From: Mytilus edulis | Lineage: Eukaryota | NCBI RefSeq assembly: GCF_963676685.1 | Contig: NC_092344.1 | Span: forward strand, 57,474,001 to 57,538,000 | DNA length: 64,000 nt | Direction: 5' to 3' | In this document: positions 2,821 to 56,736 of the stretch, piece by piece | Layout of the letters: each line of letters starts with the position of its first letter | Position numbering within the stretch: position 1 is the stretch's first letter | The notes under the pieces: model-generated | The model's input: the letters and a program-made list of their open reading frames with translations, nothing else | Database searches by the model: none | Told to the model about the DNA's origin: nothing | Position numbers and translations under genes: made by a program

Positions 2821-2944
2821 ATGTACAGGCTGTTCGCTCTTTCCCTTCTGCTTGCAAGGTGTCAAAAACAACAAATCAACCTATTGCATGGAATAAGAAT
2901 CATTTTGACTCGTCCTAAATATGCACTCAATCCAGTAGCAAAAG
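2821..2944 (+). CDS. Candidate first coding exon (signal peptide) of receptor gene A
   Basis: ATG 2821 gives MYRLFALSLLLARC-QKQQINLLHGIRIILTRPKYALNPVAK. It ends at AG|GTACAT in phase 1, compatible with the phase-1 exon at 5628. The donor is weak and there is no transcript support. Confidence 0.4.
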
Positions 2945-3962
2945 GTACATGAATTTTTATCATGCTGTTTTTTTATTAATAAAACCATCGAGACATTGAT
3001 AGATTCGGGTTTGCTTAACATCCAGTAGCAAGAACTTTATCCATGTTTATGATTTTAACAAACTTACAATAAATTAAAAAAGTAGGTTTTATAAAACAAA
3101 CCCCGACGCAGACCCTTACGTATTTCTTTGAATTGTATCTCAAGGTCAACCAATAATGGAATTATCTATTTGTAGCCTATTGTTACGGAAAATCTTATTT
3201 ATAATAAAGGCCAAGCAATACAAACAAACAATGATACAGTTAAATACATTCAATAACAATAAAACATATTTTTAAGAAAAGTTTAATTTACAAATTGATG
3301 CAAAAAATAACTATCATTAACTTGTCTGACAGGGGTGTGACACCCTTACTCAGTTCTAAAGACTGCTTCATGACGACTTCAATATATGACAAATAAGTTC
3401 AGGTGCGATTTAGAATGTGTTTATTAAATACATCAGTACATTCAAATAATGGTACATAGTCTTTTAGATATGCAGACAAGAACGAAATGCTATGTTAAAG
3501 TCACAATACAAATAGAAATGAAATTCGTCATACAGGACTCAACTTTACACAATCTTTGTGCTCTGGGAATGTTTCTATATCTACCCAATTCAATAGCTAT
3601 CAAAGAATAACTACCTACGTATACAATTATCACAGTTTAAATATTCCTATGAGAAACAAAATATTTAACGATTTAAAAGTGCATGTCTGCATGAATTTGA
3701 CTATTTCTTTTTTTGATTGTATAATTGAAAAAAACAAAGGACACGGGGTATTCATCCATGAAGCAAAATCAGTACACGCACAGCAAAGAAACATTCCTAA
3801 AACAAGGAACAGCGCTTTTATTGTTTTTATTCACAATGAGGCCTGTAAATCGTTTAAATGTTATATACATCCTGTTCCTGTGTAAAGAAATCGTCAAAGA
3901 AAAACACAACCTTGTTCAATAGACGTATCGAATAGACCCGATATGTTGAAATGTAGATGTGC

Positions 3963-4253
3963 TTTTATGCCTCAGCTACGATAGTAGAGGGGTATTATGT
4001 TTTCTGGTCTGTGCGTCCGTCCGTTTGTCCGTTCGTTCAACCGTCTGTCCCGTTCAGGTTAACGAATTTGGTCAAGGTAGTTTTTGATGAAGTTGAAGTC
4101 TGAACAACTTGAAACTTAGTACACATGTTCCCTATGATATGATATTTCTAATTTCAATGTCAAATCAAGGTTTTTATACCAATTTCAAGGTCCACTAAAC
4201 ATAGAAAATGAAAAAGCGAAAGGGGCATCCGTGTACTATGGAGACATTCTTGG
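3963..4253 (+). mobile_element. Non-autonomous Helentron/HINE (DINE-1-like) element
   Basis: T-rich ends, TTTATGCC...GGGGCAT subterminal inverted motif, internal GTCC/GTTC microsatellite and a 3' hairpin remnant. A second, deleted copy lies at 37316-37505. Confidence 0.6.
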
Positions 4254-5627: not shown

Positions 5628-8600
5628 GATGTTTTGACCAAACCCGAGAAGACTGTGCATTCAACCACTGTCTGGCAAAGTTCCGAGATGCAAATGGGAA
5701 CCCGTCAACCATTAAAAGAACAACTGCAATTCCCTTCATCACTACAGGTATATTGTTATACTAAAATACATAATCAACATATCTATTATGTTTAATTTGA
5801 TTGATACATTGATGGCTAATATGAAGCATGATTTTATCGAATGTTCAAATGGTAAATATATTAACATTCGTACTCAGTGTAATATAATATGACATTAAAA
5901 TGGCGCATGGTTTAGATGTCATGGGGTTGGACCGAACAGTTTGAAATTCTCATTCACAACGGAAAGTTACACATGATGTATATTTATATGATAATAAAAT
6001 TGAGAATGGATAAACCGATTATCACCAATATATCATTTTATTGAGAAAAATGATTCCATCAACAGGAATGATTTTAAGAATAATTGTCTCTTTTTGCTGA
6101 ACATAAAATATGCAAAGAACAACTGTTCACTTAAGGAGGTAGACCTAGGTTCAGATAAAAAAAAAACTTATAAAATCATCAGTACGTTTGTGTCAATCAC
6201 TTTCATAAATATATTCTAAGCTTCTAGGTTACACAGAATATTATCAATCTGTTTCAGGTAAATGCTTAAAATACATAGATGAAACTGTTTTTTAATAAAC
6301 TAGTCATTTTAAGTTTCCATACTTTTTGAGAATAATAATGGAGGGCCCGTTCCAATCTAATGTCATCAGACTCTCTGTTTACAAAATGACATATTCTGCA
6401 TAACTTCAATTGGAACCAATCCAGGAGCACAGACGTAAAACATGCAATTTTGATTATCGTTTTAGATCCAAACCCGCCACCAAGAAATGGTCTTGGTGAG
6501 TCACTTGGACTTTTAGGAGGGAACTTAGCAGTTTATGTCGGCGCCGGGACTGGGGGATTTGTTGTGTTATGTATTGTCATTATTTTAGTACTATGCCGAT
6601 CAAGAAATGCCGAGAAGCATAAAAGGTATTTTTTCTTTTATACCAATACTTAAGTTACATTTACACATTTTTAGCATAAGTTTATCGGCGATTTTAAACC
6701 ATAAAAAAATACATAATTTGCATGACTTTTTCTTTTGTCTTTTAAAAATCTACCGATCTCATACGTAAAGTTATTTCCAGCTAGTCTTTGCAGTTAATTT
6801 TTATTTTGTGGTATAACACCACTGTCACATGCTAGATGAGGGTTGTGTTTAACCCTGCAAAAGTCTTTACGTGCCTATCCTCAGCCAGGCACATGTAATC
6901 ATGTGGTTGTAGTTAGTTGCTACCTGACGAATTTGGTTTTTTTTTTTCGTTCAAAGGCTAATGGGTTTTCCACTTTGAATGTTTTACTTGCGCTCATGCC
7001 TTGGCCGTTTATAACTGGTTTTTTTCAGATATGAGTTTTGCTCATTGTTTAAGACTGAATAGAGACCTGCAATTGTTAGCATCTATGTATTTGGTTATCA
7101 TGGGTAGTTCTCTCATTAGCTGTGAAATCATATTTTTCCATTTTTATATTCAACGATGAGCAAAACGCATATCTTAAAAACAGTCATAAACGGCCAAGGC
7201 ACGAGAGCAAGTTAAAGCATTACTCATGGTAACTCTTAAAAGGATAAGTGTGCTAAATAAATGTATGTACATACATGTACATAAATCGAAATAAGCTTAT
7301 TTTTTTCCTGGATTTTATTTTTGTTTAATAACAGACGGGTGATAGAGGAAGATTACAGAGTGGTGGCGACGACATTGACAAATGTAAATGATTCTGATGG
7401 TACAACGTATGAAGAATTGTGTATTGTAAGTAGTAATTGGGAAAAGGGGGGGGGGGGGGTAATTCAAATTGGAATAAAGAATAAAGTTCCTTTACACGAA
7501 AGTGCACATCAGCAAAAGCATATTAAAGTTAATGAAAAATAATGCTAGACATTTTATGATGTTAAAAATAAATCATGAACAGAATCTTTCAATTCGCGTG
7601 TCAGAATCCTATGTATTTTGGGAAATATTTCCAAAAGAGTAAACAAGAACATTGTGATGATTGGCTTGTAAGTTATACAGAACGTCTGAACCCATCGGAC
7701 AACTGATCAACGACGTCATAAACGTTATTTTAATTTTGCCAGATTCATTAAATTAACCACTATTCTTCAGATTCAGCAATGGTGAATTTGATTAACAACT
7801 AACGTAAAATAAAATCAGATAAAAAAATATTTTGTAAGGACAATGAAGTACCTGAAGTACAGGGGATATATTATTTGTTCTAAATTTGTTTTCCGAGTAA
7901 TCCGAAATTTTAAAGTAGAACATGGTATTTATTGTAAAGTATTTTTTTTATTTGAATTTCTCGGTTTTTTTTTCGATATAAGATCATATAAGTCCAAATG
8001 AATTCTTATTATTATTTCTTGTTTTTATATCTTTTTAGGACAATCCCCACTACAATCGACACGATGTCCAACTGCCGTATAAAAAAGACCGAAAACGCTT
8101 ACCCGGGGTGTCCAACGCAGTAAATTACACCTTTAAACGTTTGGTCAGTGACGATTCCACATCCTCAGCCAATACATCTAAAACCTTGAATCAAGCCTCA
8201 AATAAACCTCTACCTCCAATTCCAAACTCAAATTCAAAGACATTACCAAATTATAAACAGGCGGCCGGTGCAAAACTTTCACAGTCTATTGATGAGTATA
8301 CAGAAATAGGAGGGGAGGTGAAAAGGCGTAGTAATATATATAATCCTTTGGATTCGGAGAAATTTGGGGAATCACGTGACAGTCACGGGATATACGAATC
8401 ACTTAGAGCCAGTAAAATGATGGATATACAGAATAATCGGCCTCCTATTGGACTTCCAGATGGAGAATATTTTACTTTAGCTAAGGAAGATGACAATTCT
8501 ACTCCAAAAGAGCCCATTTCACCCGGTGAATACATGGTACTCGCAAAGGAAGAAGAAGAAAGTAGTTCGGAAAATCAAAGGTTGTTAACATCAACTGAAA

Positions 8601-8914
8601 TGTCAGAAAGTAGTTCGGAAAACCAAAGGTTGTTACAATCAGCTGAAATTGCAGAAAGTAAAAATGAACAATCGGAAATGACGCCTTACGCAGAATCGTC
8701 ATCAAGATCTGTAATTGAAGACGAGGCTGACAGTGGAATTTGTGAGAGTGGTGGACCTAAAAATGACTATTACATTCTTGAAAAGGATTCCGACAAAAAA
8801 GATCAATCTGAAAATTCAGATTATATAGAGCCAGTAAAAGGTGATCGACATTCATATATGCAAGTACTGCCAGAACATGCAAAACTTTGTCGAAAAAAAG
8901 AACTTGAAAATTAA
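5628..8914 (+). CDS. Gene A: single-pass membrane receptor/adaptor, short Cys-containing ectodomain, long Tyr-motif-rich tail
   Basis: Exons 5628-5747 (GCFDQTREDCAFNHCLAKF...), 6466-6625 (TM VYVGAGTGGFVVLCIVIILVLC then RSR), 7335-7425 (...DYRVV...TTYEELCI) and 8039-8914. All have AG/GT ends. Phases 1/2/0 match the TM-to-tail phases of genes B and C. Confidence 0.85.
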
Positions 8915-12825: not shown

Positions 12826-12939
12826 ACATTTGAATTTCTAAAACAATTTCCCAATAATAAGATAGAATTAGGATAGATTCAAGATTATATTTGTAATACT
12901 GATATATAACAATGACAACCAAAATACTAATTAATATCA

Positions 12940-16904: not shown

Positions 16905-18298
16905 TGTTGTGAAAAATATGGACATTGCAATAGACTTTATTGAGCCTCGTGGAATTGACGAAACAACCACAGTGAGAAATGATCTTCAAACGGAAAAGTT
17001 TAAAAGTTATGCAGATGAATTAAAGATAAGGAAGGAAGAAAAGTTAAAACGTAAGGAACAAAAGAAGAAAGACAGAAAAGAAAAGAAATTAGAAAAAGCT
17101 GAAAGAAAAAAAGAAGAGAAACAATTACGAAAAAATGGCAAACTCGATAACACAGAAATTGATGTCAGTTTTACCACTATTAAGCAGTCACCGGATGAAA
17201 ACATTTCCTTTTTGGGAACACAGAATTCAGGAAATGACACTATCTCGGAAATATCAAGTGCAAATCTTCCTCCGAAAGAATTTTCGGAGAATGTGAAAAA
17301 TGTGAAGATAAATAAAAAAGATGGAATACACATTATTTCACAGGAATATGTGAAGAATTTAATTAAAAATGCACTAGAAGCTAGAGAAAATAGCCCGGAA
17401 GCAAAATTATCGAAACCTATTCCATTGTCTATTGTGACTTCAACTAAACCGAACATGCTACTGTCGACTTTAAAGTCCACAACAACTACTGATTCAATAG
17501 CAGGAAGGGATGAATTAATGACAAACGTTCTGAGTGAACCTCGAGTGAGTCCAACAACTTTTGAGTTTGCCACACGAGAAAGTAATAAGCCAACAACAGA
17601 AAGTACAAACACAAAAGAAAGAACAACAAAAGCGTTTTCAACATTGTTACCAGGGGTTGATAAGCAAACAGCAAAGCCAAAAGCTATTTCGACAACAGAA
17701 AGAACGCAACACATCAGTGAATTTCCACAACCAGGAAATGAAAACATTAAGGAAAAAGCTTCTGTAACGAAAACACGAGAAGTCACCACTGTAAAATCAT
17801 CAGTAGATGCTGCAATTATAATTCCAGAACTCACAACGATCAAATCAACGGAAGTAGAAAAACAACCGGAAATAACAACAACAAATGTAACCAAAAAATG
17901 GACAACTATCGAAACAACAACAGAAATGAAAACACTACCTAAAATAAAAACAACAAATGTAACAAAACAAACGACAAATGTTGAAACGATGACTAGTTTA
18001 CCTTCTACTGTCTCACAACAATTAGGAAGTACTATTAATAACACTTCTTCGACATTCACTGCAAAAAATGTAGACACGAAAGTCCCGGATGAGGAAAAAG
18101 ATATAAAGGAATCTAGTAATACAACATTGAACAATATGCCAAAAGAAGCACATTCTGGTTCTGGTTCAGTGTTTGTCCAAGAAAATAAAAACTCAAATTC
18201 AACTAAAGCGGATGATATTGATATTATTATATTCCCATCTAAGAGAGCAGATAAAAGGAGAAGAAAGCAAGAGAGAAGAAGATTCTGTTCTAATATTG
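16905..18298 (+). CDS. Gene B mucin exon B1 (Lys/Glu-rich segment, Thr/Ser-rich stalk, first Cys of the Cys domain)
   Basis: Lies in the 469-aa ORF. Ends IFPSKRADKRRRKQERRRFCSNI-G|GTAAGT, phase 1. The start is a candidate acceptor (TTTAG, 16904). Confidence 0.8.
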
Positions 18299-42700: not shown

Positions 42701-45700
42701 GTCCAAAGTCCTTTTTGAATGTCCCATAAAATTGTCCCCGGGATGAATTTTCTATATCGCCAAACCATGAGGTAATAAACTGATCACTCAATATACGATC
42801 AAGATAATTTTTATCACAAAAGCCCATTTGGTTTATGAAAATATATCCTAGACCAGTGTTGTTAAATATTGATTCGACAGAATCAATCCATTTAAAAACA
42901 TAATGGCCATGATTCTTCAATGATAACATCAGCCTGTACAAAGAACTACTTAGTTTACTGCTAATGTTTACAACTTTACACCAATACGAAATCATTCTAC
43001 ATTTAACTCGAATTTGCAGAGGAAATCTTCCCAATTCTCCATACACCATGAAATTGGGTGTAGTATTTCGAACTTTTAATATTCTTTTGCAAAATTTCAA
43101 ATGCATCTGTTCAATAAATTTCAAATTCTCAAAACCCCAAACTTCAGAACCATATAAAAGAATGGGTTCTATCATGGAATCAAATAATTTCAGTTGCAAA
43201 TCTATAGAAATGTTTTTAACAATTCTATGTATAAAATGCATCGATTTATGTGCTTGATCAATAAGTTTCTTTTTGGTATCTAAAAAAGTACCGTTATATT
43301 TAAAGATAACACCTAAATAAGAAAATTTTTCAACAATCTCAAGTTCTTTGTCTTGTAATAAAAATTTAAATTTCTTTTTACTTTTTCTCTTTCTAAAAAT
43401 CATCACCTTTGTTTTATTTAAATTGACTTCTAATTTCCACTTTTCACAATATGATTGAAAAATATTTAATGATCTCTGCATACCTTCTTCTGTTTCAGAT
43501 AAAATTACAGTATCATCTGCATATAATCTATAATACTAAAATTACGAGGTCCAATTTGTCAGCCGTCATCACGTAAAAACGACGTATCAAAGAATTCAAC
43601 TTTATATATAACTTATATAGTACAAAGGTGTAGATTAAAAATTACACCACTCCAGGCCCTTTTGTTTTCCACGTAATTAATATTGCCAATAATTAAGAAG
43701 TTCCGGGTTGAGTCCGATACCGATACCAATAGTATATTCACCTGTTACCTATTACCTTATTTGTACGTTCCGCATCTGACAGGCGCACCACCAAACGGTG
43801 TATTCAGGATTAATATGCTATATACACAGGTCATATACACAGGGTTGACACTACTAGATTGTCACATTGTTACCTATTGTAGCATTTTAATCAGTAAAAC
43901 TTTCTAAGATAACAATACGAATACTAAAAATCTGGACTAAAATAAGGCAGTCCAGTTTTCAATTTTGTTAGCGGGCATGACGTAAAACAGCGAATCAAAG
44001 AATTCAACTTAGTTTATAACTAATATAGGACAATGCTGTTGATTAAAAAATATTCCATTCCAGGACCTTTTGTTTTCCAACTAATTAATACTACCAATAA
44101 TTGACAAGTTCCAGTTCGACGGATTCAAACAGAAAGATTTGAAAGCAGAGAAAACTGCGTATCTTATAATCGGCATGACTTTATCAGATGACAATACTAA
44201 TATTAAAATAAGGCTTGCGCATAGTTATATACTTTAATTCAGTCACGGACCCGCGATATCACGGGTGTGTTCTAGTATAACAAATAATTCAGAAAATATG
44301 TGCAATTCACTTTGAAACTTCTCTTTAACAGTTTCTAGTGGAATCCCATCTAGATTCTTAAAGTAGTCTTCTAAGTCATTAAGAAAAATTGAAAACAAAA
44401 ATGGCGATAAATTCTCCCCCTGTCTTACACCTGCGAAACAGGGAAAAAAATCTGACTGACATCCATTATATTTTACACATGATTTGATTCCTTGGTACAT
44501 ATTAAAAATAACTTTAAAGCACTTCCCTTTAATATTACTCAATTGAAGTTTTTCCCATAAACCAGATCTTGATACAGTATCGAATGCTTTCCGAAAGTCT
44601 ACAAAAGTACAAAAAAGTTTTTTTCGAAATGAGAAATACAGCTCTATGAGTGCATGAAGCACAAAAATATTGTCTACAGTTGAATACCCCTTTCTAAAAC
44701 CCGCCTGATTTTCATGTATAAGTGAAATTTCATTTGCAAAAAAATTCAATCGAGTATTGATTATGGAAGTGAATAATTTCCCTATACAACTAATTAATGT
44801 TATAGCTCTATAGTTATCTGGATCCTTTGGACAACCCTTATTTTTAAAAACTGGTATAATTATTCCTGCTGTCCAAGTTTCAGGAATTATACCTGTATCC
44901 AATATCACATTAAATAGTTTAGTGTAAATACAAATAAAAAATGGTGGAGAGTTTTTCAAAAACTCATTCAGTATCTTGTCAGTACCAGATGCTTTACCAT
45001 GTTTCAAGTTCTTAACGGCATCCACAACCTCTTGTTCTGTAATGACTCCATTTAAAATTTCATTATAAATGGGGTCACTACACAACGCATTGATGTCGAT
45101 GCCGTCAAGATCTTCTTCGTCATTTGCATTCATGTTTTTAAAATATTCATGAAATGCTTCAATACTGATAGAGGGGTTGTCTTTTTTGTAGCCAGAATAT
45201 TTTTTAAGTGTCTTCCAAAATCTCTTAGAGTCATTTTTTGAGAGTGCCCTCAGTTCATCCGAACATTTTTCTTTATACTGCTGATAGTTAATGTTAAGTG
45301 TCTTGCGGTATTCCTTGGCCTTGCTATTCATTGCCAGTTTATTACCACCTGATTTCGCTCTGCTATATAAGTTTCTAGCCTTGTGAAACTCATTACGTTT
45401 GTCTTGGCAATTTTTATCAAACCATGGTTTATTTTTGCGGTCGGGATAAACCGGTCTTTTTTTAGTCTTGCCTAGAACTCCTTCTGCCGTATCTAACAGT
45501 ACATTGCCAAGGTCATCAACTAGACCGTTTATCTTTTCAGGCGTAAAATCATTTGTGTCAATACTACTCAAAACGTGATCAATCTGTTGTAAATTACCTG
45601 AGACACTGGATAACGCTTGAAAATATTCGTCTGCTTTTCTACAGTCCCATTTAATGTGAGTTTCTGTGTTACCTGTATTTTTTTCTGTGTTTACCTTATC

Positions 45701-48700
45701 AGTGTAATTACTATCAGTATTGAAAGACAATGTAAAACATATTATACTGTTATGGACATCTGAAAACATGGGATTAAACTCATCTACTCTAAATTCAGAG
45801 ATATAATCAAACATGTGAGGAGATACAATTAAATAATCTACTACGCTGGAGTCTACATGTAGTATGACCTATAAATTTGTCTGAGAAAATACGACCATTA
45901 CATATAAAAATTCCACATCTTTTACATAGTTCTAAAAGAAGAGTACCATATTTATTCACTCTACCTTGATCATAACTGTATCTTTGTAGAGGAACATTTT
46001 TACTTTCTAACAACAGATAAGATCAAAGTACTGAAGTACTGAACATCAGATGACCGCAGGTTCTTGTGGATGGTCAAAAGCACATGTCGCAGAAACAGAT
46101 CACATCTCTATACCTGAAACTTGGGTTAATTTACAGAGATATTTTTTTTCTGATACAAGTTCGTGCTTGGATGATGAATAAATGACAGGAAATTCAACCT
46201 CACCGTAATAACTATTATATTGTAGTGCAAGAAATCAGTATACCTTGGACTATTATACTTATATAATAATAGTCGTAGAGAATACACTGGTTTGTTGTTA
46301 TATATATTATTAATATTACGATTGCATGTATATCTAATTTTCATCTATTTGTATATGATAATTCTATTCTATTATTATTATAGTGCAGTGCAAGTGCATG
46401 GTGGACACTCTTCTGTAAAAAAATCAAAGCCTTAAAGGCTGTAAAAGCAATTGCTGCCATGTTAATGTTTTGGGGACTTAATTTTCATCTACATATATAA
46501 GAATTAAACCTGACAGGACATAGTTGTCTAGTGAAAAGCAAGAAGGTTTTGACTTTATATCAATCAAAGACTTAAGCAGGAAATCATTTTTAATATGTTT
46601 TATATTTCACAAGGAGGCAACAAGTTTACCAGGCTAAAGTTGGGGGTAATTATGGATTATCCCCTGGTAGTGTTTGTAACTGGGCAATAATTACTTTTCT
46701 TTATTTAATTTTAACAATTTTCATAATTAATTTAAATTAACCATTCAGTTAAAACATTTCACCTTTCGAGACGCTAATGTTGAAAAATGGGACAGAAATA
46801 AAATAACTTACAAGACATAAACATGTAAAAAATAAATATATATTTCAGCTTACTAAAAATATTTTTATAGTGTTACTTTGACATCATTTCTTAAAACTAA
46901 GTCCCACACATAATTGTTCATTTGATATGTGTCATCCTCATGCGATACGAGAAGTTTTCATGTCGCTAAATTGTCTTCTTGTCGCTTAATTTATTCTTCT
47001 TGTCCGTTCTTGACGCTTCTTGTCGCTAAAATTCTTCTTGTCGTTATTAGTGAGACCGCTATTTTTAGATTACAGGTGGTCATTTACACTACACGTATAA
47101 CCTGTGTAGTGATTTTTATTTCACGATAAATTTATGAATGAACGATATTTTATGAATGAACAAGAGCACCTGACCTCTTTCTGAAACACCAATTAAACAT
47201 ATAAAATCGTATTTATTAAGATATAATTCAGTCAAATTTTCACCACTATAAAATCAACAACTGAAATGATTCCATATAATTTTGTTGAAACATCGTACAA
47301 CCGGAGAACAGAAATCGCAGGTATGAAAATGCACTTTTTTCACTGGTGTTGAAAACCCAAAACTAATTTGACTATTATTTATGAATGACGGAAATTTAAG
47401 CGATAACAATACATCGGAGTGACCTCAAGGTCATCCTCTGTAAAAAAATATATTTATTTATAACATCGTCTTCTACCTGTAAAATTTCTAGTAAATTTTC
47501 ATCAGGTATAACATGATCACTATCAATAGAGGTTCTAGAATTAAAATCACCAATCAGTGCTACTTCTTTTGAAGTATTTGAAAATCGAATAAGTTCATCT
47601 TCAATCTCTGAAAAAGATTCATCAGATGAATATCTGGAGAATTCTGGAGGTATATAAACACACCCAAGTAAGATATCTTTACCCGTATCAAAATTTCCGT
47701 GTAAAATTTCTACCCACTGAACGAACTCAGATTCTGAGTTAATAAATTTAAGAATATGTGACAGTTTCTTTTTATAAATGATAATAATACCTCCTGATTT
47801 CTTTTTAAATTTTTGTCTATTCTTAGTAAATAGAGTATAATCTGTTGGTAATTTAATTTCGTCATAATCATCAGTTTTTGTTTCTACAAACACCAGAATA
47901 TCATGTTTTTTAATAAAATTATCAAAGCAGGGTTCAACAATTTTGATTTTAAACCACAAACATTAAGGTAAGTGATATTGAGTTTATTTACATTGTTATT
48001 TAGCGTTCTACGACTGTCTGATGCGTTATCCTAACGGTGTCCCGTCTGATTACTGTGTATTGGGTTGCGAGGCTCTTCACGGGCTGGTTCAAACGGTTGA
48101 CCGTCTACAAAAATCTGATCATACACTAATGATGCCCGGATATTACGCCTATGGAGTTCCTTTAGCTTTGGTAACAGTTTTTGACGACGGTTGCTGATCT
48201 CAGTGGGATATTGCTGGTTAACTGTAAATTTTGGTTTTAGTTTAAGTTTCTGCGGAACGACTTTTTTCACTCTTTCATGGTCTTTATAGTGAGTAAATCG
48301 AGCAATAATATTACGCGGTTTTCCGTCCCGTCGTGGTCGTAATCTATGGACGTTTTGGAAATCTATTTCATCCGCTTCAGGAATATCAAGTTCTGTTTTA
48401 ATAAAGTTCTTGAGTACAGTTTCAGTATTTTCCTCCTCATCAGTTTGTACAATACCGCCGAATATAAGGTTGTATTTCATCGAGTGACTTTGTAGTTTTA
48501 AATACTCCTCTTTCAGTTGATTTTTTTCTGTATCAATTTCTCGGGTGTAATTTTCTACCAAATTCATTCTGTCGGCAATTTCAAAATGGTGCTTTTCTTC
48601 ATTTTCCAAAATTTGTGCATGTTCATTTTGAGTTTTCTTTACAGAGTCGATTTCTTGGTGTAAGTTTGAAATTTTCGTATCAATGTTGTTGAATCTTTCA

Positions 48701-51700
48701 TCAAGTTTTTTGTCCAGTTTAAAGAGTTTATCACCCACTTCAAAGTCTATTCGTTCTAATCTTTGGTTCATTATGTTAATTGTTGAAAACAACATTTCCA
48801 TGGTTATGTTCTAAACAAACTTGCTCGCAGTTTGACACAAGGTATATTTTCATCCATAATATATAAACTCATCATAGATACCAGTACTAAATTTTGTATA
48901 TACGCCAGACGCGCGTTTCGTCTACAAAAGACTCATCAGTGACGCTCGAATCCAAAAAAAAAAAAAAAAGAAAAAAAAAAAGGCCAAATAAAGTACGAAG
49001 TTGAAGAGCATTGAGGACCAAAATTCCTAAAAGTTTTGCCAAATCCAGCTAAGGTAATCTATGCCTGAGGTAGAAAAATTCTAAATTTTGTAAACAGTTA
49101 ATTAATAAATATAACCATATCAATGATAATTCATGTCAGCACAAAAAGTGCTGACTACTGGGCTGGTGATACCCTCGGGGAAATAAATCTCCGCCAGCAA
49201 TATACCTATTTCTAAACTTTCAAAATATATATTCTATATTGTCTTCAGAAGAACTAGACGTACCATGCATAAGGTTATGCCATTAAGTTATGAAAAAATG
49301 ACAGTGATTAGCTGAATCAAAGTGAGAAGGGTTGCTGACATCAACTTTGATTCGTTTTTGGCTGATTTTTGTACAATTGGCAATCATACCACATCTCTGT
49401 TATGTGTATATATTCTTTTGTCGTCCAATAAGTTTAGAGGGTTGTTCCATTCTGACTGATACAAAAAATCTGTACACATAAACAACTTATACCAATAATC
49501 TGTGAAAAAAACAAAACTTGTACAAACAATCTGTTCAAAAAACAATATCTACATATTATCTGTACAAAATAACAACTAGTCCAAAAATCTATCCAAAATA
49601 ACAACTTGTACGGAAATTCTGTACATAACAACATGCACAAAAAGTATGTTCAAAATAACAAGTTGTACATATAAATTATTGTTAACAAACATACTTGCAG
49701 TATACAGCTTGGCTCACGACCGTAATATTGTTAAGATACATAATTCCCATTGCGTCTTGTGTATGTTTTGAGATGTATATAAAATCTTTACACTCTGAAT
49801 CGCCGCCAGGTTGACCCGGTTGGTACACTTTGAAACATTCATCCAAGTTGACTTTCGGGTAGTTATCCTGGATCCACTGTTTTGCTGTCGAAGACTGGAG
49901 ACCATCTTTAATTTTACCATCTTCACAGTGGCTTTCGCCCAACATGTTTGTGAATTGATCTGTGCATACTTCTAAACTGGAAACTAATCTGAAATTTCCC
50001 AACAATTTTTATTATGTATAAACGTTCTAAAAAGGTCCGAAAATACTAGATAATACATTTGACCACCCAAACCATCCGACTTATTTGGAAAAGAACCAGG
50101 CGTATTCTCAAAACAAAGTTTCTTTGCTAACAAAGTCTTACTAACTAAGATATAAAAGCTGCATGTATGTCCTGACGGATAAATTGTTTTGAGTGGAGGC
50201 ATCACAAAAATGTATTCCGTTGACTGTCTGATAATAATAATAATCATCGTAATAATAATATACACGCAGAGAAAGAATAAACTTACGAACAAATATAATA
50301 GTTGGAATGTGTAAGGGATCCTCCAATGATAGGAGGAAAACAACCAATGGCAGATATCAGCCCAAGACGATCAGGAGATGTACACAACGATTCAGTAACT
50401 TCTTCTACTGTAAAACAAGATCATATAATATAAGTGTTATATTTGGTGGGGTTTGTGTTTCTCTGTCTTTAGTTTTCTATGTTGTGTTTTGTGTACTATT
50501 GTTTGCAATTGTCTGTTTGTCCTTTTCACTTTACCAATGGCGTTGTCAGTTTATTTTCGACTTTTGAGTTTGATTGTTCATTTTGTATCTTTCGCATCTC
50601 TTGTTGTCATTGGATAATGAAATTCACCGATAATTACATTTTGCTAAAGCAAAATTGGTCAGCAAAACAAGATATAAAAAAAGCCAAATTAGTGCAATCG
50701 TCAACCAACTCGTTACATATGTTGGTATACCCCCTAATCGCCTACTAGTTTAAGTGCTTTTGGTTTTTCCCTATTTTTTTAATACCATAAATGTCTATGT
50801 TTAGATAGAAAATTAGCTGAACCAAAATGAGTCTCGATGTTGGTTCACACCGCTCTTTTATTCTTACTGCATTGCAATAATTCATTTTTATGCAAAATTA
50901 CAATAAGTGGCACAGACTCCTTAGGTCTTATATTTTTTTTTTATTAACGATAGTAAAAGATTTGATAATATGCTTACATTGACACGATTGCGTGTCCAGT
51001 GCAGTCAACCAATCATCGGTATAATATGTCGCCAACTTGGTAAATGTGGTATGAAGACTCTGCATGTCACAGGTTTCGCCATTTTTAACAGCAAGTAATT
51101 GAATACATCTACCTACTTCATTGTATATCCTGATGAAATAAAAATACATTATCACGAGTCTTCCACTTTACCGAACAGTTTTTTGTTTGTTCCTTTTGTC
51201 TAATAATGGATGTATATGAATGTTATATAAACCATGCCAGTGCTGACATCCTGACTACATTAAAATAAGAAGATGGGGTAAAGGGCTGAAATAAATACAA
51301 AACAAATACATCTAACAAAAATACAGAGTGGACGAGGCACAGTACTTATACATCCCTACAACAAAAAGACACGAAGTGCAAATCTGAGAGTACTCGTAGT
51401 TACTGTATATCTTACAAGTATGCAGTATGCCTCTCTTCCAAAGATCTCATCTTAATTTATCTCAGTGTTTCCATCTATAAAGTTAATATGCAGCGTGTGC
51501 ATGACTTTAAAAGAACAGCCGCAAATCTTTCTCAAGTTGATTTTGTTTGGAATTGTTCCTACGTTAAACAGTTAGTTTGAATCAAATTATACATTTTAAG
51601 TGCACAAAAATGAATAACAAACAACATATGGTCTAAATTGTATAAATCAGTCATAAAATGGAGTGAATTAACACATATCCACGTGCGAACGCACACTCAC

Positions 51701-54700
51701 TTTTTGCATACATTTACATGTTACGGTATCTTTTCCAGTTGTCGTGTAAGTAAACAATACATATTTTTCTAATTGAACATTACACTTACTGACAAACATC
51801 CGTATGTGTGTGTACGGTATTATTCAGTACAGCAAGAATACCAATACAGTTGGTTGAATATTTGGAAACTTTACTTATGTGCGAGCATGCGTCGACTGTA
51901 AAATATAAGACACCATGTTATCATGGTACATGTTCTTGCTTTATTGGTAAGTGTGATGTCAAAAGCTATTATACTCAGTCTGACTGTACATGTTTCATAT
52001 AAGATTTGAAAACATGATTAATAACATTACAAATCCAATAAGCTCAGTGTTACTGATCTAAATCAAATACATGTATGTCTTAACTGAATGTCAAGCCAGA
52101 CCCGCGTTTCCCCTACACAAAACTCATCAGTTGTCAGGTCATTAAAGTAGCTGGAATGCAAGATACGAACTGAAGTTGAAATACGTTAAAAAAATAATTT
52201 TATGCCAATAGATATACAAGAAGATGTGATATGGGTGTCAATGAGACAACTTTCCACCCAATCAAAAACACGGATTTATTGCTAAGGGGTAAAATCTTCG
52301 TGTTTTCAATAATTCAACATGTTTAAATTGAGACTGAATTAAGCAACAGTTGAAAATGTATACAAAGACGTATTGAAGCATTTGCAATGCAGTCCAATTT
52401 AATGTTTATAATATTGAATGCGTTTTTGTAGTTATATTGACAGAAACACATTTTGTATGACGATAGTCTTCGTGTGCAAACGGTGATTACAACTAGTTAC
52501 CTCATATATTGATACCGATATAACTTTCTGTTCAGAAAAAAATATGTAAATTAAAACAAAATGATAGCATCGTGCCTTGATAAGTTTAATGTTTAATGAT
52601 ATCATAAAATAAGAACTTTTTAAATTGGGATGTAAAGGTAAAACATTACGAAAGAGTCGATGGCAAAGATACTTACTAGCAGTTACTTCTTTCTGGAAAA
52701 ATGCAAAAAGTGATCAGTCTAACATATACATGTAGCAGTAAATGTATACGATCAAATCTTATATTTCTGATAAAAGGATGCAACTATGTTGTTATTACAT
52801 GTATTTCCATTCTAGCCTCGATTGAAAGACGGTCGTGAGTTCAACCCTTGCTGGGTCAAACCAATAACTGTAAACCAATAACTGTAAACCAACTACTACG
52901 ATATGACATCATTTGTAACGAAGCAAACATTTTCTAAAACCCTTTAGTGTTCATATTATAAGACCAACTCGTTTATGTTAAACTCTTTAGTCAGCGACTC
53001 GCTCAGAAATGCATTGGTTTTCTCCGGGCACCTCAGTTGCCTCCGCCAATAAAAACGGTTTATTCTCGATTGTCCCACTTATAAATATTTTAGAGTTCTG
53101 ATTGTCCCACATGAAAAGTTCTGATTGTCCCACATGAAAAGTTCTGATTGTCCCACATTATTTCATGAAGTGAAATGTTCTTAGATAAACCAGGTTACTA
53201 TTGTTTGTTTTACTAAATAAACAAGAATTTATTATTGCACATTTAATATTGATTTTAAAAAGTATAAAAAAATGGTTTTTTAACTCATTAGATTAATACA
53301 CTTTTTATTTTAAAAATATAAATTTCTGATTTATGAAATATGTCTACAATTTTACGTTATTTGTAAAAAACTTTTTTATATACTGTATTTTTAATTACAT
53401 TTTCTCTATGAAGTTGTTAAATAAATTTAGAAATTATAAAAAAAAATGAGAATGGAAATGGGGAATGTGTCAAAGAGACAACAACCCGACCAAAGAGCAG
53501 AAAACAGCCGAAGATTACCAATGGGTTTTCAATTCAGCGAGAAACTTCCGCAGCCGAAAGTGTGTTTCAGCTGACCGCTAAACAAAAATGTGTACTAGTT
53601 CAGTGATAATGGACGTCATACTAATCTCCGGAGTATTCACAAGAAACTAAAAATAAACAAAATAACAAAATCACTAACAAAGGCCAGAGGTTCCTGACTT
53701 GGAACAGGTGCAACAATGCGGTGGGGTTAAACATGTTTTTTGAGATCTCAACCCTCCTTCTATACCTCCAATATAGAAAAAACAAACACACAACAATGCG
53801 CACAGTAAAACTCAGGTAAGAATTGTCCGAGTCCGATGGCCGAATAGGTAACAAAAGAAACTAAACAAAATGACAATGATGCATAATTTAACAAAGGACT
53901 ACTTGCAGTTACTGACATGACAGCTCCAGACCTAAATTGAACTGATTAAAAGATTATGTCTTCATCATATGAATATCAAGTAAAATCCCTCCCGTAAGGG
54001 GTTTAGTATAAATACCATCATACAATACATGAGAAGAACATAATAGTTATCAAAGGTACCAGGATTATAATTTAGTACGCCAGACGCGCGTTTCGTCTAC
54101 ATATCATGCCATTAACAGGTTGTAGAATACATGTGTTTATTTCCGATGCAAAGACCATATAAGTGAATCAATATTAAAGCCAAACTATGCAAACTTTAAT
54201 GACCTGCCAACAGTATCGTAAAAACTATCTATATCCTTTCTTAATGAGTCTGTTTAAATGTTTTATAAGCTTTTGAAGTGAATGCCGACGTTTTTGTTCT
54301 TTGTAAAGAATATTTACCATAAAAATTGGATGTGAAGTACCTGAACGTACAAGATGTCAGCATGTTGAATTATATTTACGAATGATGTCCTTGTACCGAT
54401 GATAAAATTTAGTAAATGTTTTGACTAGTTTGTGATATCGAAAACCCTGGTGTAATAATTTTTCAGTAATACAATTTAGAATAAACTCATTTAAATTTCC
54501 ACTCTACACGAACTTGTTGATAATGATATTTTTTTCACAAGTCTTTGCAATTTTACTGGGAAAGTTAGAGGATAGTAATACATCATTCTTTGCATTATCA
54601 ACGTCAGTTTCACATGAACCCAAGAACTCCCTTATATGATAACGAGGCCGCTGTTTAGAATTCTGCCAGATCAGCCTTTCTAAAAATCAATATTAAAAGA

Positions 54701-55104
54701 TTGTTTTTCCAATATTCCCAGTGTTTTTGCCATAAAGTGCAATCAACAGGACTCGTCACCAACCAGTTTTCCATAAAAAAAAAAGAAGATGTGGTATGAT
54801 TGTCAATTAGACAACTCTTAAGACTAGTAGACTAAAAGACACGAAAATTAACAACTATAGGTCACCTTACGGTCTTCAACGATGAGCAAAGCCATAAACC
54901 CCATAAGCCAACTTTAAAAGCCCCACTATGAAAAATGTTAAACAATTTAATTTGAACTAGAAAAACGAACGACCTGATTTTTGTACAAAATAATGAAGAA
55001 AACACAAATGTGTTACACAACAAAAGACGACAACCACTGACTGAATACTCACGTCATCATTACAATTTACAGAATTATATGACTTTTCAAACTTTCTTTT
55101 ACTT

Positions 55105-55198
<94 letters not shown>

Positions 55199-55265
55199 AT
55201 CATCATCAATACTCACGTCATCATTACAATTTACAGAATTATATGACTTTTCAAACTTTCTTTTA

Positions 55266-55357
<92 letters not shown>

Positions 55358-56736
55358 ATCATCATCAATACTCACGTCATCATTCATTACAATTTACAGA
55401 ATTATATGACTTTTCAAACTTTCTTTTACTTTTTTCTCTCTCTCTCTCTCTTACGAATTTCCGATACATAGAACTATCTTATATGCAATTAAAGGTAATC
55501 ATCGGTTCCTTTTTTCAGTACAACTCATCATAAGGTGTTGCATAAACACATGCATAAACGTTTTAATTCCATTGTATAGTTACGGAAATATTAGGCTTCT
55601 CAATTATCAAAATTAGTGTTTGTCAAACTGCTATATATACAATGAAATTTTTCCGAGAAAATCAGTGGTTCAAAGTTTTTAAAATTTTTATATTTTTGTC
55701 AAAGGGTCAAAGGAAGTATTTTGTGAAAATTAAACGAGCCAAATTTATTTCAGTCAAGGTGTTAGGTACATCTGTACGTCCACCTTAAGACTAAAAAAGT
55801 TTGTGACCGTATGAAATTAAAGAATTAAACATTTAAAACAATTTGACGATGAATTTGTGGTGTCCTTCCATTGCACTTTTTTATGATTAAAACTGAATGC
55901 CAAGCTCTGTATGTCTTTGGCTTTGTATAATACCTAATATCAGTGATGATCACATTGTCCTATTACTTATATTTTTCTCCTACTTATGTCTGTTCCTTAA
56001 TCACCTATCAAGCAATATTAGTGTAATCGTATATTGGTTTTTGTGGTTGTTGCTGTGTAGTCCGGTTACTGTCTCATAGGTGTGTACATTACATCTTTTA
56101 TTTTTTATTTGAGATTGCAGCGATCTAAGTCCATAGAATAATAAAGTACCAAACAGTTAATCTTTATTTGCTTACTTTCTAGTATCTATTGACATCTGTT
56201 TAATTGAGCAATCATGGTATTTACGACGCCAGTTGACAAACCGAATCGAATTAATAATACAGAGAATGACCATTGCCAGTTAGACATTTTGGTTATTGAA
56301 TTAATTGCCGATTGAAATTGTTTAAGGCGACTTGAATAAATCGGCATAATTTGGACTCTAGTCCAATAGGATAGTTGTCACATGAGCAATAAAGGCAACA
56401 GTAGTACATGTATACCGCTGTTCAAAAATCGTAAATCTATGGACAAAAAAACAAAATCGGGGTAATAAACTAAAACTGAGGGAAACGCATTAAATATAAG
56501 AGAAGAACAACGACACAACATTAAAATGTAACACACACAGCAACGGACCAAGCATTAGACAAAATCCAATGAGAATAACCAATATAACATCAAAACCAAA
56601 TACATGAATTTGAGCAATCATACAGCATCTTTTTCATTTTATTGAAAGAATATGTAAATAAATAAGAAAGATGCCTTACCGTAACATAATTAAGGTAGAA
56701 CAATACAGAAATAATCGTTAGATAGTCCGGTCTCAT
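39797..56736 (-). CDS. Gene D: secreted 384-aa protein with four tandem Cys-rich (6/6/4/6 Cys) domains
   Basis: Exons 56736-56680 (MRPDYLTIISVLFYLNYVT), 52692-52677 (KEVTA), 51895-51790, 51129-50978, 50407-50287, 49988-49695, 41261-41119 and 40062-39797. All are GT/AG, with phases 0/1/2/1/2/2/1 and a total of 1155 nt in one open frame. It has a signal peptide, no TM segment and ends at Cys-stop. The first two exons are less certain than the rest. Confidence 0.82.
41407..41850. mobile_element. Foldback MITE (almost entirely palindromic), TA-flanked
   Basis: GAATGAAATTCAAAACAGTGTGGCTGTGGCCATTGATTGACAC... is a perfect inverted repeat for ~85 bp, then continues imperfectly towards the centre. 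Confidence 0.9.
41905..42218. repeat. ~80-95-bp minisatellite (3-4 imperfect units) interrupted by the LINE
   Basis: Repeated TTGTTCAT..ATAC.TGTTTCTAAAG...TAATGTTCTAAAAAACATTGTCGTCGTTTAACGCATGAAAC. The last unit appears to resume at 48806. Confidence 0.7.
42363..43526 (-). pseudogene. LINE ORF2 3' part (YADD onward, CCHC zinc knuckle)
   Basis: LYADDTVILSETEEGMQRSL...IETGRW...CTLCHKFIGDEFHVLFVC. Confidence 0.9.
43527..44275 (+). mobile_element. Non-autonomous Helitron (749 bp)
   Basis: 5' TC, 3' CTAG and subterminal hairpin ACCCGCGATATCACGGGT, inserted between A and T with no TSD. Removing it restores the LINE frame FVILYADD exactly. Confidence 0.92.
44276..46020 (-). pseudogene. LINE ORF2 central part (endonuclease end, tether, RT)
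   Basis: 523-aa ORF plus an upstream 68-aa ORF joined by a frameshift near 45850. Motifs SDVH, NYRAITL, QAGFR and GVRQG. Confidence 0.9.
46021..47440. mobile_element. ~1.4-kb unclassified non-coding insertion splitting the LINE endonuclease
   Basis: Endonuclease-coding sequence stops at ~47441 and resumes at ~46020. TAA is present at both junctions, and terminal similarity is only weak. Confidence 0.6.
47441..47995 (-). pseudogene. LINE ORF2 N-terminal APE endonuclease (frameshifted)
   Basis: LNITYLNVCG, then a frameshift, then DILVFVETK...SGGIII...GCVYIPP...LIGDFNSR. Confidence 0.88.
48031..48801 (-). CDS. LINE ORF1p (coiled coil + L1-type RRM/CTD), probably N-terminally truncated
   Basis: Heptad-rich N-terminus, then SMKYNLIFGGI, VHRL, PRNIIARF and QYPTEISNRRQKL. 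It lies directly upstream of ORF2. Confidence 0.85.
   Translation of the reverse strand: MEMLFSTINIMNQRLERIDFEVGDKLFKLDKKLDERFNNIDTKISNLHQEIDSVKKTQNEHAQILENEEKHHFEIADRMNLVENYTREIDTEKNQLKEEYLKLQSHSMKYNLIFGGIVQTDEEENTETVLKNFIKTELDIPEADEIDFQNVHRLRPRRDGKPRNIIARFTHYKDHERVKKVVPQKLKLKPKFTVNQQYPTEISNRRQKLLPKLKELHRRNIRASLVYDQIFVDGQPFEPAREEPRNPIHSNQTGHR
48863..49198 (+). repeat. Dispersed repeat family 2 (longest copy)
   Basis: Matches 14791-14962 and 12468-12825. Fragments also occur at ~52095 and ~54045. Confidence 0.85.
49460..49680. repeat. ~30-bp degenerate minisatellite
   Basis: Repeated AATCTGTNCAAAATAACAACTTGTAC-like units. Confidence 0.7.
53068..53158. repeat. 23-bp tandem repeat
   Basis: GTTCTGATTGTCCCACATGAAAA x3 plus a partial unit. 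Confidence 0.8.
53445..54040 (+). repeat. Dispersed repeat family 1 (long copy)
   Basis: Starts TGAGAATGGAAATGGGGAATGTGTCAAAGAGACAACAACCCGACC. Parts match 366-670, 11480-11560 and 26893-27030. Confidence 0.8.
55044..55451. repeat. Compound repeat: three tandem units, each ending in a (TC)n microsatellite
   Basis: AATACTCACGTCATCATTACAATTTACAGAATTATATGACTTTTCAAACTTTCTTTTACTTTT(TC)n x3. Confidence 0.95.
56388..56611 (+). repeat. Dispersed repeat family 3
   Basis: Matches 12093-12245. Confidence 0.7.

What the first reader, a model, noticed from the sequence alone, without database searches (positions are those of the whole stretch)
2821..56736. Candidate undescribed recognition locus: three tandem ITAM/ITIM-type receptors facing a secreted protein built from a similar Cys domain
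Seen: genes A, B and C share TM-to-tail exon phases (1/2/0), a Gly-rich TM, a juxtamembrane Cys and Y-[FYM]-x-L-[AE]-K tail motifs. B and C add a divergent mucin stalk and an 8-Cys domain. Gene D converges on C (stops 1.6 kb apart) and encodes four Cys domains with a signal peptide and no TM. I recognise no Ig, lectin, LRR, EGF, C1q or SRCR domain in any of them. Established: clustered receptors with ITAM/ITIM tails plus soluble relatives are the layout of paired immune-receptor and allorecognition loci. Inference: this is a non-Ig receptor family with a soluble decoy, opsonin or homotypic ligand, acting in immunity, allorecognition or gamete recognition.
Basis: partly seen in the sequence, partly recalled or inferred. 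Interest (0 to 1): 0.85.

Follow-up and report, generated by a model that had tools for sequence, protein, structure and literature searches.

The report
Mussel tyrosine-motif membrane gene cluster
A mussel-specific cluster of three related single-pass membrane proteins with tyrosine-signalling-type tails lies next to a secreted four-repeat cysteine protein whose repeat unit seems to be reused in two of them; the genes are real, and one is shown to be expressed, but any role in immunity or recognition is unproven.

Summary
The window is Mytilus edulis chromosome DNA. Genes A, B, C (+) and D (-) are real, and public records name their products only "uncharacterized". RNA contigs from two runs carry all five predicted splice junctions of C. 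An 8-exon model of D translates exactly to XP_071168029, and A matches 421-aa transcripts and RefSeq models of other Mytilus species. A, B and C share intron phases 1/2/0 around the membrane span, a GxxxG helix, a Cys at the membrane border and acidic tails enriched in Yxx[L/I/V], each with one ITAM-like pair. Three points need correcting. A starts at 2498, not 2821. None of A, B or C has a recognisable signal peptide. The "mucin" exons are only 23-26% Ser+Thr. D is a secreted protein of four ~85-aa six-Cys helical repeats. Neither D nor the B/C Cys module has a Pfam family, a PDB relative or a clear fold match, and DUF19/CPG4 is only a weak lead. The B/C module shows no significant sequence similarity to the D repeats. 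It does share their three intron positions and phases and the Cys spacing of the second half, so kinship is likely (~65%). Immune function, allorecognition and D-C binding remain untested. Moderately interesting.

The parts
2498..2510 (+). Gene A exon 1, coding part (MGRS + 1 nt), phase-1 donor
   Evidence: Matches P0001/P0036, which start with MGRSG.
5628..5747 (+). Gene A exon 2: short N-terminal ectodomain with 3 Cys and a Thr-rich stretch (phase 1 to 1)
   Evidence: tblastn of P0001; model translation.
6466..6625 (+). Gene A TM exon (Gly-rich helix, Cys and basic cluster at the border; phase 1 to 2)
7335..7425 (+). Gene A juxtamembrane exon (YRVV ... YEEL; phase 2 to 0)
8039..8914 (+). Gene A tail exon: PLPPIP, YTEI-x10-YNPL, YFTL, YMVL, YYIL, YIEP, YMQV
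   Evidence: Single copy in the genome.
16918..18298 (+). Gene B alternative first coding exon 1 (Lys/Glu-rich then Thr-rich; ends ..RRRFCSNI plus a phase-1 donor)
   Evidence: 467-codon open frame in 32% GC DNA; splice sites. No RNA evidence here.
19365..20022 (+). Gene B alternative first coding exon 2 (ends ..KLFCARI plus a phase-1 donor)
   Evidence: Either exon joins in frame to the next exon.
21478..21619 (+). Gene B Cys-module exon 1 (142 nt, phase 1 to 2; ends Cys + 2 nt)
22423..22562 (+). Gene B Cys-module exon 2 (140 nt, phase 2 to 1)
23086..23305 (+). Gene B stalk + TM exon
23843..23963 (+). Gene B juxtamembrane exon (YKTV-x9-YAEI)
25108..25530 (+). Gene B tail exon (YLSP, YIEL-x10-YAKL, YFVLEKE)
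32777..33662 (+). Gene C first coding exon (Ser/Thr-rich disordered region; ends ..RRRFCAGFRL plus a phase-1 donor)
   Evidence: Orthologues P0051/P0053 start at this Met. Donor confirmed by RNA contigs.
34488..34629 (+). Gene C Cys-module exon 1
   Evidence: RNA joints 33662>34488 and 34629>35499.
35499..35638 (+). Gene C Cys-module exon 2
   Evidence: RNA joints.
36521..36713 (+). Gene C stalk + TM exon
   Evidence: RNA joints.
37137..37254 (+). Gene C juxtamembrane exon (YKSV-x9-YEEI)
   Evidence: RNA joints.
37839..38201 (+). Gene C tail exon (YLSP, YLDL-x8-YAKL, YFVLEKEDE-stop)
   Evidence: RNA joint 37254>37839. The X9 contig runs into the 3' UTR.
56680..56736 (-). Gene D exon 1 (signal-peptide-like N-terminus)
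   Evidence: the model equals P0007 exactly.
52677..52692 (-). Gene D exon 2, a 16-nt micro-exon
51790..51895 (-). Gene D exon 3 (repeat 1, first half; ends Cys59 + 2 nt)
50978..51129 (-). Gene D exon 4 (repeat 1, second half)
50287..50407 (-). Gene D exon 5 (repeat 2, first half; ends Cys150 + 2 nt)
49695..49988 (-). Gene D exon 6 (repeat 2 second half + repeat 3 first half; ends Cys248 + 2 nt)
41119..41261 (-). Gene D exon 7 (repeat 3, second half)
39797..40062 (-). Gene D exon 8 (repeat 4 + stop)
42363..48810 (-). Decayed non-LTR retrotransposon (endonuclease + reverse transcriptase ORF fragments) inside D intron 6. It is not part of the genes.
   Evidence: The same intron is about 1.2 kb in the paralogue D'.

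Best explanation
This is a Mytilus (probably mytilid) lineage-restricted cluster. A, B and C are paralogous single-pass membrane proteins, predicted N-terminus out and C-terminus in. They share one module: a GxxxG transmembrane helix, a Cys at the cytoplasmic border (a candidate palmitoylation site), a basic stop-transfer cluster, and an acidic disordered tail studded with conserved (D/E)-Y-x-x-(L/I/V/P) sites. These sites include a YEE[IL] site, one ITAM-like Yxx[LI]-x8-10-Yxx[LI] pair and, in A, a PLPPIP motif. The most likely mechanism (inferred, not shown) is a cell-surface phosphotyrosine scaffold: clustering of the protein lets a Src-type kinase phosphorylate the tail, which then docks SH2 proteins (Syk/Shark-, SHP2-, Crk- or Csk-like). 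A looks like a transmembrane adaptor, with an ectodomain of about 55 aa and no signal peptide. B and C add a long Ser/Thr-rich disordered N-terminal region and one membrane-proximal 8-Cys helical module. D is a secreted protein of four ~85-aa six-Cys helical repeats. The B/C module is probably one D-type unit acquired by exon shuffling, since it is a symmetric phase 1-1 two-exon cassette with the same internal phase-2 intron. Whether D acts on B/C is unknown. The adjacency by itself can be explained by local duplication.
For: Gene reality: spliced RNA contigs for C; exact RefSeq match for D; transcripts and RefSeq orthologues for A.

Shared module: identical intron phases. B-C identity is 51% in the tail and 46% in the Cys module. 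A versus C gives three collinear weak matches: TM E=8e-6, then 0.05 and 0.1.

Tail under the strongest constraint: 91% identity against 76-78% for the N-terminal region. The Tyr motifs of A are kept in 54%-identical orthologues. Tyr followed by L/I/V at +3: 9/16, 6/11 and 5/9, against a 13-15% background (P = 2e-4 to 3e-3). There is one ITAM-like pair per tail, reached by 2-5% of shuffles.

Topology: charge after the TM is +5 to +7, and about 0 before it (sequences).

D: four repeats align with conserved Cys spacing. AF2 gives an all-alpha model with pLDDT 70.6.

Kinship of the B/C module and the D unit: phase-1 intron in, phase-2 intron in the codon right after a Cys followed by x7-C, phase-1 intron 1-2 residues after the last Cys. 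This holds in B, in C and in D repeats 1-3. Both are predicted helical. The language-model neighbours of both include DUF19 clusters.

An ITAM-Syk pathway exists in bivalves (oyster CgIgR-CgSyk, PMC6994640).
Against: No phosphorylation, binding or tissue data exist. No signal peptide is present in A, B or C or in any annotated orthologue. Export of a 450-700-aa N-terminal region without one would be unusual, so the 5' ends or the topology may be wrong. Sequence statistics do not support the B/C-D kinship: hhalign probability is 0.5%. The D-repeat HMM scores 5.1 bits on C, equalled by 65 of 3000 shuffles, and 1.0 bit on B, equalled by 720 of 3000. Yxx-hydrophobic sites are also endocytic signals. 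B has no RNA support here. The similarity of A to B/C is weak by sequence.
Confidence: 0.55

Rival explanations
1. One reading: B and C (and A) are ITAM/ITIM immune, allorecognition or gamete-recognition receptors, and D is their soluble decoy, opsonin or homotypic ligand.
For: ITAM-like pairs are conserved in all three tails. D is secreted and probably built from the same module as the B/C ectodomain. C-D adjacency is kept in several Mytilus species, and the 3' part of C was duplicated together with D. Bivalves use ITAM-Syk signalling. Nematode DUF19 genes, the weak nearest lead for D, include 14 of 51 induced by infection (PMC3534327).
Against: There are no expression, polymorphism or binding data. 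The family is tiny (A, B, C, a broken C', D, D'), unlike expanded and diversified recognition loci. ITIM matches are at chance level for A and B. Linkage is only shown within one genus. The complex prediction gave no answer. There are no signal peptides on A, B or C.
Confidence: 0.12
2. B and C are surface or endosomal glycoproteins of the sialomucin type (like CD164, MUC1 or CD43). Their Yxx-hydrophobic sites are AP-complex sorting and endocytosis signals, not SH2 docking sites. D is an unrelated extracellular matrix or secretion protein that happens to be the neighbour.
For: Yxx[LIV] fits the adaptor mu-subunit motif (established knowledge). The last motif lies at the extreme C-terminus (YFVLEKEDE-stop), as in lysosomal targeting signals. 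The N-terminal regions are Ser/Thr-rich with N-x-S/T sequons. CPG4, a proteoglycan core family, is among the language-model neighbours of D.
Against: Acidic residues before nearly every Tyr, a YEE[IL] site, YxxP sites and a PxxP motif are typical of kinase substrates and SH2/SH3 docking. There are 9 to 16 Tyr per tail, far more than sorting needs. S+T+P is only 27-31%, below mucin domains.
Confidence: 0.2
3. The N-terminal regions of A, B and C are cytosolic, because there is no signal peptide. The Cys/His-rich module would then bind metal inside the cell, and the proteins would not be surface receptors at all.
For: None of the proteins or annotated orthologues has a signal peptide. B exon 1 begins with a Lys/Glu-rich stretch typical of intracellular proteins. 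The module has three conserved His besides the 8 Cys.
Against: The strong positive charge lies on the C-terminal side of the TM. There are no CxxC or CxxH knuckles. The module shares gene structure with repeats of a clearly secreted protein. The tail motifs are cytoplasmic in type.
Confidence: 0.08

Closest known systems
Vertebrate transmembrane adaptor proteins (LAT, PAG/Cbp, NTAL, LIME, LAX)
   Same: Gene A: no signal peptide, a short N-terminal ectodomain, a single TM, Cys at the cytoplasmic border, and a long disordered acidic tail with many conserved Tyr docking motifs and a PxxP site.
   Different: There is no detectable sequence relationship (the Pfam scans are empty). A has 3 ectodomain Cys. 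The paralogues B and C carry large N-terminal regions and a Cys module, which these adaptors lack. Palmitoylation and phosphorylation are untested.
ITAM-bearing receptors and signalling chains (CD3-zeta, FcR-gamma, DAP12; Drosophila Draper; oyster CgIgR, PMC6994640)
   Same: One Yxx[LI]-x8-10-Yxx[LI] pair sits in each predicted cytoplasmic tail with acidic residues before the Tyr, and it is conserved among paralogues and orthologues. Draper is recalled from memory, not tested here.
   Different: The ectodomain is neither Ig (CgIgR) nor EGF-type (Draper). There is no charged TM residue for partner pairing as in DAP12 or FcR-gamma. The spacing is 10 in A and B. Syk/Shark binding is untested.
DUF19 / T20D4.11-like (PF01579) and CPG4 (PF15481) secreted Cys-rich nematode families
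   Same: D is secreted, Cys-rich (12 Cys per two units) and helical. The nearest language-model clusters are DUF19 and CPG4 (score 0.84). UniRef names one D' orthologue 'DUF19 domain-containing'.
   Different: No HMM match was found at E up to 10 in nine proteins scanned, and a genome-wide PF01579 search does not hit this locus. Scores under 0.9 are leads only.
Membrane-tethered mucins and sialomucins (MUC1, CD43, CD164)
   Same: A Ser/Thr-rich disordered extracellular part, a small structured membrane-proximal module, Cys after the TM, and a Tyr-motif tail.
   Different: There is no true PTS domain (23-26% S+T), no SEA or EGF domain, and no signal peptide.

Membership tests
ITAM-bearing immunoreceptor or signalling chain | Yxx[L/I]-x6-8(-12)-Yxx[L/I] in the tail | tested here: met
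   C has YLDL-x8-YAKL, B has YIEL-x10-YAKL and A has YTEI-x10-YNPL. Shuffled tails reach this in 2-5% of trials.
ITAM-bearing immunoreceptor or signalling chain | The motif lies in the cytoplasm | tested here: inconclusive
   The positive-inside rule favours a C-terminus-in topology (sequences). However, no signal peptide explains export of the N-terminus.
ITAM-bearing immunoreceptor or signalling chain | The doubly phosphorylated motif recruits a tandem-SH2 kinase (Syk/ZAP-70/Shark) | not testable with these tools
   This needs a biochemical assay. The pathway exists in oyster (PMC6994640).
ITIM-bearing inhibitory receptor | [S/I/V/L]-x-Y-x-x-[I/V/L] in the tail | tested here: inconclusive
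   C has 2, B has 1 and A has 0. Shuffles reach the observed count in 3% (C) and 34% (B) of trials, and at least one match in 49% for A.
Transmembrane adaptor proteins (LAT/PAG type) | Type III topology with a short ectodomain, Cys at the membrane border and a multi-Tyr tail | tested here: met
   Met for gene A only. B and C have long N-terminal regions.
Transmembrane adaptor proteins (LAT/PAG type) | Sequence membership in the LAT or PAG families | tested here: not met
   The Pfam scans of P0001, P0027 and P0034 list no such family at E up to 1-10.
DUF19 (PF01579) / CPG4 (PF15481) | HMM match at or above the curated cut-off | tested here: not met
   No match for P0007, P0010, P0055, P0058, P0061, P0063 (D family) or for P0050, P0051 (C orthologues). 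The PF01579 search of the whole genome misses the locus.
DUF19 (PF01579) / CPG4 (PF15481) | Profile-profile or fold similarity to family members | not testable with these tools
   No DUF19 sequences or structures could be obtained. Only language-model neighbours are available (0.84 and 0.76).
Membrane mucins | Pro/Thr/Ser-rich domain (usually over 40% S+T+P), with SEA or EGF modules | tested here: not met
   S+T is 23-26% and P is 4-7%. There are no Pfam domains.
Ig, C-type lectin, LRR, EGF, C1q and SRCR receptors | Presence of the named ectodomain | tested here: not met
D-type six-Cys repeat (defined here) | The B/C module is a member by sequence | tested here: not met
   hhalign probability is 0.5%. 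HMM scores are 5.1 and 1.0 bits, with empirical P of 0.02 and 0.24.
D-type six-Cys repeat (defined here) | The B/C module is a member by gene structure and Cys pattern | tested here: met
   The three intron phases are the same (1, 2, 1). The internal intron lies in the codon right after a Cys followed by x7-C. The second half has three Cys at x7 / x9-12 / x25-29.

The most novel reading that the evidence does not exclude
B and C are non-Ig, ITAM-type surface receptors whose single membrane-proximal six/eight-Cys helical module was copied from the neighbouring gene D. D, a secreted four-module protein, acts on them as a ligand, decoy or bridging factor through module-module contacts. This would be a previously undescribed receptor/soluble-paralogue recognition system of mussels that feeds into Syk-type signalling.
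Probability: 0.12. Interest if true: 0.75.

Novelty: new variant of a known kind. Interest (0 to 1): 0.45.

Why it matters
Bivalves lack antibodies, and the few ITAM/ITIM receptors studied in them so far, such as oyster CgIgR and the oyster NCAM1 homologue, are Ig-type. A conserved family with Tyr-docking tails on a different, undescribed ectodomain module would widen the catalogue of invertebrate signalling receptors. The adjacent secreted protein made of four such modules adds a candidate partner. The locus also gives a small, tractable system: two to three receptors and one to two soluble proteins. With it one can test how new receptor ectodomains arise by local exon shuffling. If the proteins really lack signal peptides, they would also be unusual examples of long N-terminal ectodomains exported by a signal-anchor alone. 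If the tails turn out to be only sorting signals, the finding is an ordinary lineage-specific membrane glycoprotein cluster.

Tried and rejected
1. Complex prediction of the C-orthologue Cys module (P0050 residues 172-300) with D (residues 24-384) gave 'no answer', score 0.00. This is evidence neither for nor against binding.

3. PDB sequence searches found only chance rows.

4. A Pfam DUF19 search of the whole genome hit only a non-Cys-rich ORF on another chromosome. I judged that hit spurious after reading it.

5. I looked for conserved upstream (signal-peptide) exons by comparing the regions 5' of B and of C. Only repeat fragments matched.

6. The extra hits of the D-exon search (P0011, P0012, P0013) were read and rejected as unrelated repetitive proteins.

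8. The search of earlier findings returned nothing.

9. Rfam found no family in the window.

10. Joined step left out: the spliced models of B and C were never sent to any search or folding tool. I searched exon by exon by reference and used the database orthologues (P0050, P0051, P0053) instead.

Full report
**Origin and material.** The window is G000:C1:57474001-57538000 of a 1.37-Gb assembly. Gene D translates without a single mismatch to XP_071168029.1 of Mytilus edulis, which sits on a 126-Mb contig. Base composition is about 32% GC. One N run (58770-58869) was left untouched.

**Gene C.** The exons were found by open frames and by paralogy with B. RNA contigs were laid on 33400-39399. 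One contig of run X1 (organism A) and one 1220-nt contig of run X9 (organism B) carry five joints. These are 33662>34488, 34629>35499, 35636>36519 (equal to the GT..AG pair 35638/36521 after a 2-nt shift), 36713>37137 and 37254>37839. These are exactly the predicted junctions, so C is transcribed and spliced as modelled. Two large raw RNA runs of organism A (X19, X22) held almost no C reads, which suggests restricted expression. The tissues are unknown because the runs are coded. Annotated orthologues (M. coruscus 611 aa, M. edulis 552 aa, M. californianus LOC127719050 518 aa) start at the Met at 32777 or further in. None has a signal peptide.

**Gene A.** The tail exon finds a 420-aa M. galloprovincialis protein (98% identity). 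It also finds 421-aa proteins of M. californianus (LOC127719116) and M. coruscus, many transcript-derived copies, and 54%-identical proteins of more distant, unnamed species. All Mytilus copies begin with MGRSG. In the window this is ATG 2498 plus a 13-nt coding stretch and a phase-1 donor, followed by exons 5628-5747, 6466-6625, 7335-7425 and 8039-8914. A has an N-terminal part of about 55 aa with three Cys and a Thr-rich stretch, and no signal peptide.

**Gene B.** All splice sites are canonical, and the model is in frame from either of two long first coding exons (16918-18298 or 19365-20022). Each of these ends in ..FCxxI plus a phase-1 donor. They cannot be spliced to each other in frame, and an in-frame stop lies between the acceptor at 16882 and the first ATG of the upstream exon. 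I read them as alternative first coding exons or as one active exon and one relic. I had no reads call left to test B.

**The shared module.** In A, B and C the TM exon is entered in phase 1 and left in phase 2, and the next exon ends in phase 0.
- The helix carries GxxxG and is followed by Cys and +5 to +7 net charge. The 15 residues before it are about neutral, which predicts N-terminus out and C-terminus in.
- The juxtamembrane exons share [D/R]Y[R/K]xV ... Y[A/E]E[I/L].
- B and C tails are 51% identical.
- A aligns to the C orthologue only weakly but collinearly: TM E=8e-6, then 0.05 and 0.1.
- Across Mytilus species the tail is the best-conserved part of C: 91%, against 86% for the Cys module and 76-78% for the N-terminal region.
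- Tyr is followed by L/I/V at +3 in 9/16, 6/11 and 5/9 cases, against a 13-15% background (binomial P = 2e-4, 2e-3, 3e-3).
- Each tail has one Yxx[LI]-x8-10-Yxx[LI] pair, which 2-5% of shuffled tails reach.
- ITIM-type matches are at chance level in A and B.
- Most Tyr are preceded by Asp or Glu. A also has PLPPIP, and B, C and A have YxxP sites.
- The Tyr motifs of A survive in the 54%-identical orthologues.

I conclude that the tails are most likely Tyr-kinase substrates and SH2/SH3 docking scaffolds. This is an inference from motif type and conservation, not a demonstration.

**The N-terminal regions of B and C.** They are 23-26% Ser+Thr, 4-7% Pro and 22-32% charged, without Cys. That makes them Ser/Thr-rich and disordered (pLDDT 30-40 in the C orthologue), but not a classical mucin domain. 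A basic cluster (for example RKRNIERRR) precedes the first Cys.

**Gene D.** Searching every protein of the 50% representative library with the 107-aa exon found the full 384-aa protein, two fragments and one 369-aa homologue at 30% identity. The other hits are unrelated.
- D has a hydrophobic N-terminus, no TM and four ~85-aa repeats. The Cys pattern is C-x13-16-C-x13-18-C-x9-C-x12-C-x24-30-C in the distant homologue. Repeat 3 of Mytilus has lost Cys 2 and 4 together.
- AlphaFold2 gives an all-helical model (pLDDT 70.6, pTM 0.60).
- The nearest language-model clusters are nematode DUF19 and CPG4 families (0.84, below the 0.9 mark). UniRef labels one orthologue of the paralogue D' 'DUF19 domain-containing'. 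The PF01579 HMM matches neither the proteins nor the locus. DUF19 is thus a lead, not a membership. In C. elegans DUF19 is a family of 51 putative secreted proteins, 14 of them induced by infection (PMC3534327).

**Is the B/C Cys module a D-type unit?**
- By sequence statistics, no. hhalign probability is 0.5%. The D-repeat HMM scores 5.1 bits on C (65 of 3000 shuffles reach this) and 1.0 bit on B (720 of 3000).
- By gene structure, yes. In D repeats 1, 2 and 3 a phase-2 intron splits the codon directly after Cys3 (C59, C150, C248). A phase-1 intron lies one residue plus one base after Cys6 (C109, C295), and the unit is entered in phase 1.
- The B/C module consists of two exons (142 + 140 nt). 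It is entered in phase 1, split in phase 2 in the codon directly after a Cys (..HVC|H..HIC|Q), and left in phase 1 two residues after the last Cys.
- After the internal intron the patterns are x7-C-x11/12-C-x28/29-C in D and x7-C-x9-C-x25-C in B/C.
- Both are predicted helical, and DUF19 is also the rank-2 neighbour of the C module (0.76).
- An internal intron at the same codon position and phase by chance is roughly a 1% event. My estimate is about 65% that the module descends from a D-type unit, most simply by shuffling of a symmetric 1-1 cassette from the neighbouring gene.

**Family size and linkage.** In the whole genome the tail of B matches only B, C and a third site about 186 kb downstream of C. 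The Cys exon matches only B and C. The D exons match only D and a copy D' in the same downstream region, and A is single-copy. The downstream copy holds the TM, juxtamembrane and tail exons of C at 95-98% identity. The tail alignment breaks into two pieces in different reading frames, which suggests a frameshift, and no Cys or N-terminal exons lie within 16 kb upstream. It also holds a complete D' (= XP_071168038, 90% identical to D). A, C and D orthologues have neighbouring accession numbers on one M. coruscus scaffold, share one 150,944-bp M. galloprovincialis contig (A and D), and share one M. californianus chromosome. Linkage is thus conserved, but only within a young genus, so it says little about function. 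The prediction of a C-module/D complex gave no answer.

**Verdict.** The 'receptor with ITAM-type tail' reading is reasonable at motif level. The 'similar Cys domain' claim gains support from intron positions but not from sequence statistics. The immune, allorecognition, gamete and decoy parts remain speculation. The missing signal peptides are an unexplained point that must be settled before any topology-dependent claim. The closest analogues are transmembrane adaptor proteins (for A) and ITAM-bearing receptors such as oyster CgIgR (PMC6994640), without any family membership. I rate it a new variant of a known kind, with interest 0.45.

Noticed in passing
window 42363-48810 (-): A decayed non-LTR retrotransposon sits inside D intron 6, on the same strand as D. 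It has ORF1-like, endonuclease (PF03372) and reverse transcriptase (PF00078) fragments in several frames. The same intron is about 1.2 kb in the paralogue D'.
   Followed up: partly
G000:C1:57696488-57709881 (loci L011-L012), about 186 kb downstream of C: A segmental duplicate carries the 3' part of C (TM to tail, 95-98% aa identity) plus a complete D' gene (XP_071168038). The C-like tail alignment is split between two reading frames, and no Cys or N-terminal exons lie within 16 kb upstream.
   Followed up: partly
window 16918-18298 and 19365-20022 (+): Gene B has two long first coding exons. Both end in ..FCxxI with a phase-1 donor and both fit the same downstream exon. This looks like a variable-first-exon layout, or one active exon and one relic. 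There is no RNA evidence yet.
   Followed up: partly
window 52677-52692 (-): A 16-nt micro-exon (KEVTA + 1 nt) is needed for the D reading frame and is present in the RefSeq protein.
   Followed up: yes
window 34789-34842 and 37418-37455: Two short intronic stretches attract hundreds to thousands of partly matching RNA reads, with unrelated flanks, in all four runs. They are probably a high-copy transcribed repeat (SINE/MITE-like). There is no Rfam match.
   Followed up: no
window 8557-8660 (+): A 48-nt tandem duplication (2.2 copies) inside the A tail exon gives the repeated peptide ESSSENQRLL.
   Followed up: no
window 55109-55353, 58335-58650, 4-225: (TC)n microsatellite of about 120 copies; 54-nt tandem repeat x5.9 next to the N gap 58770-58869; 43-nt palindromic tandem repeat x5.2 at the window start.
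   Followed up: no
P0050 (M. californianus LOC127719050): The RefSeq orthologue of C starts at an internal Met, about 95 residues downstream of the start used in M. coruscus and M. edulis models. Either the N-terminal part is dispensable or broken there, or the 5' end is incompletely annotated.
   Followed up: no
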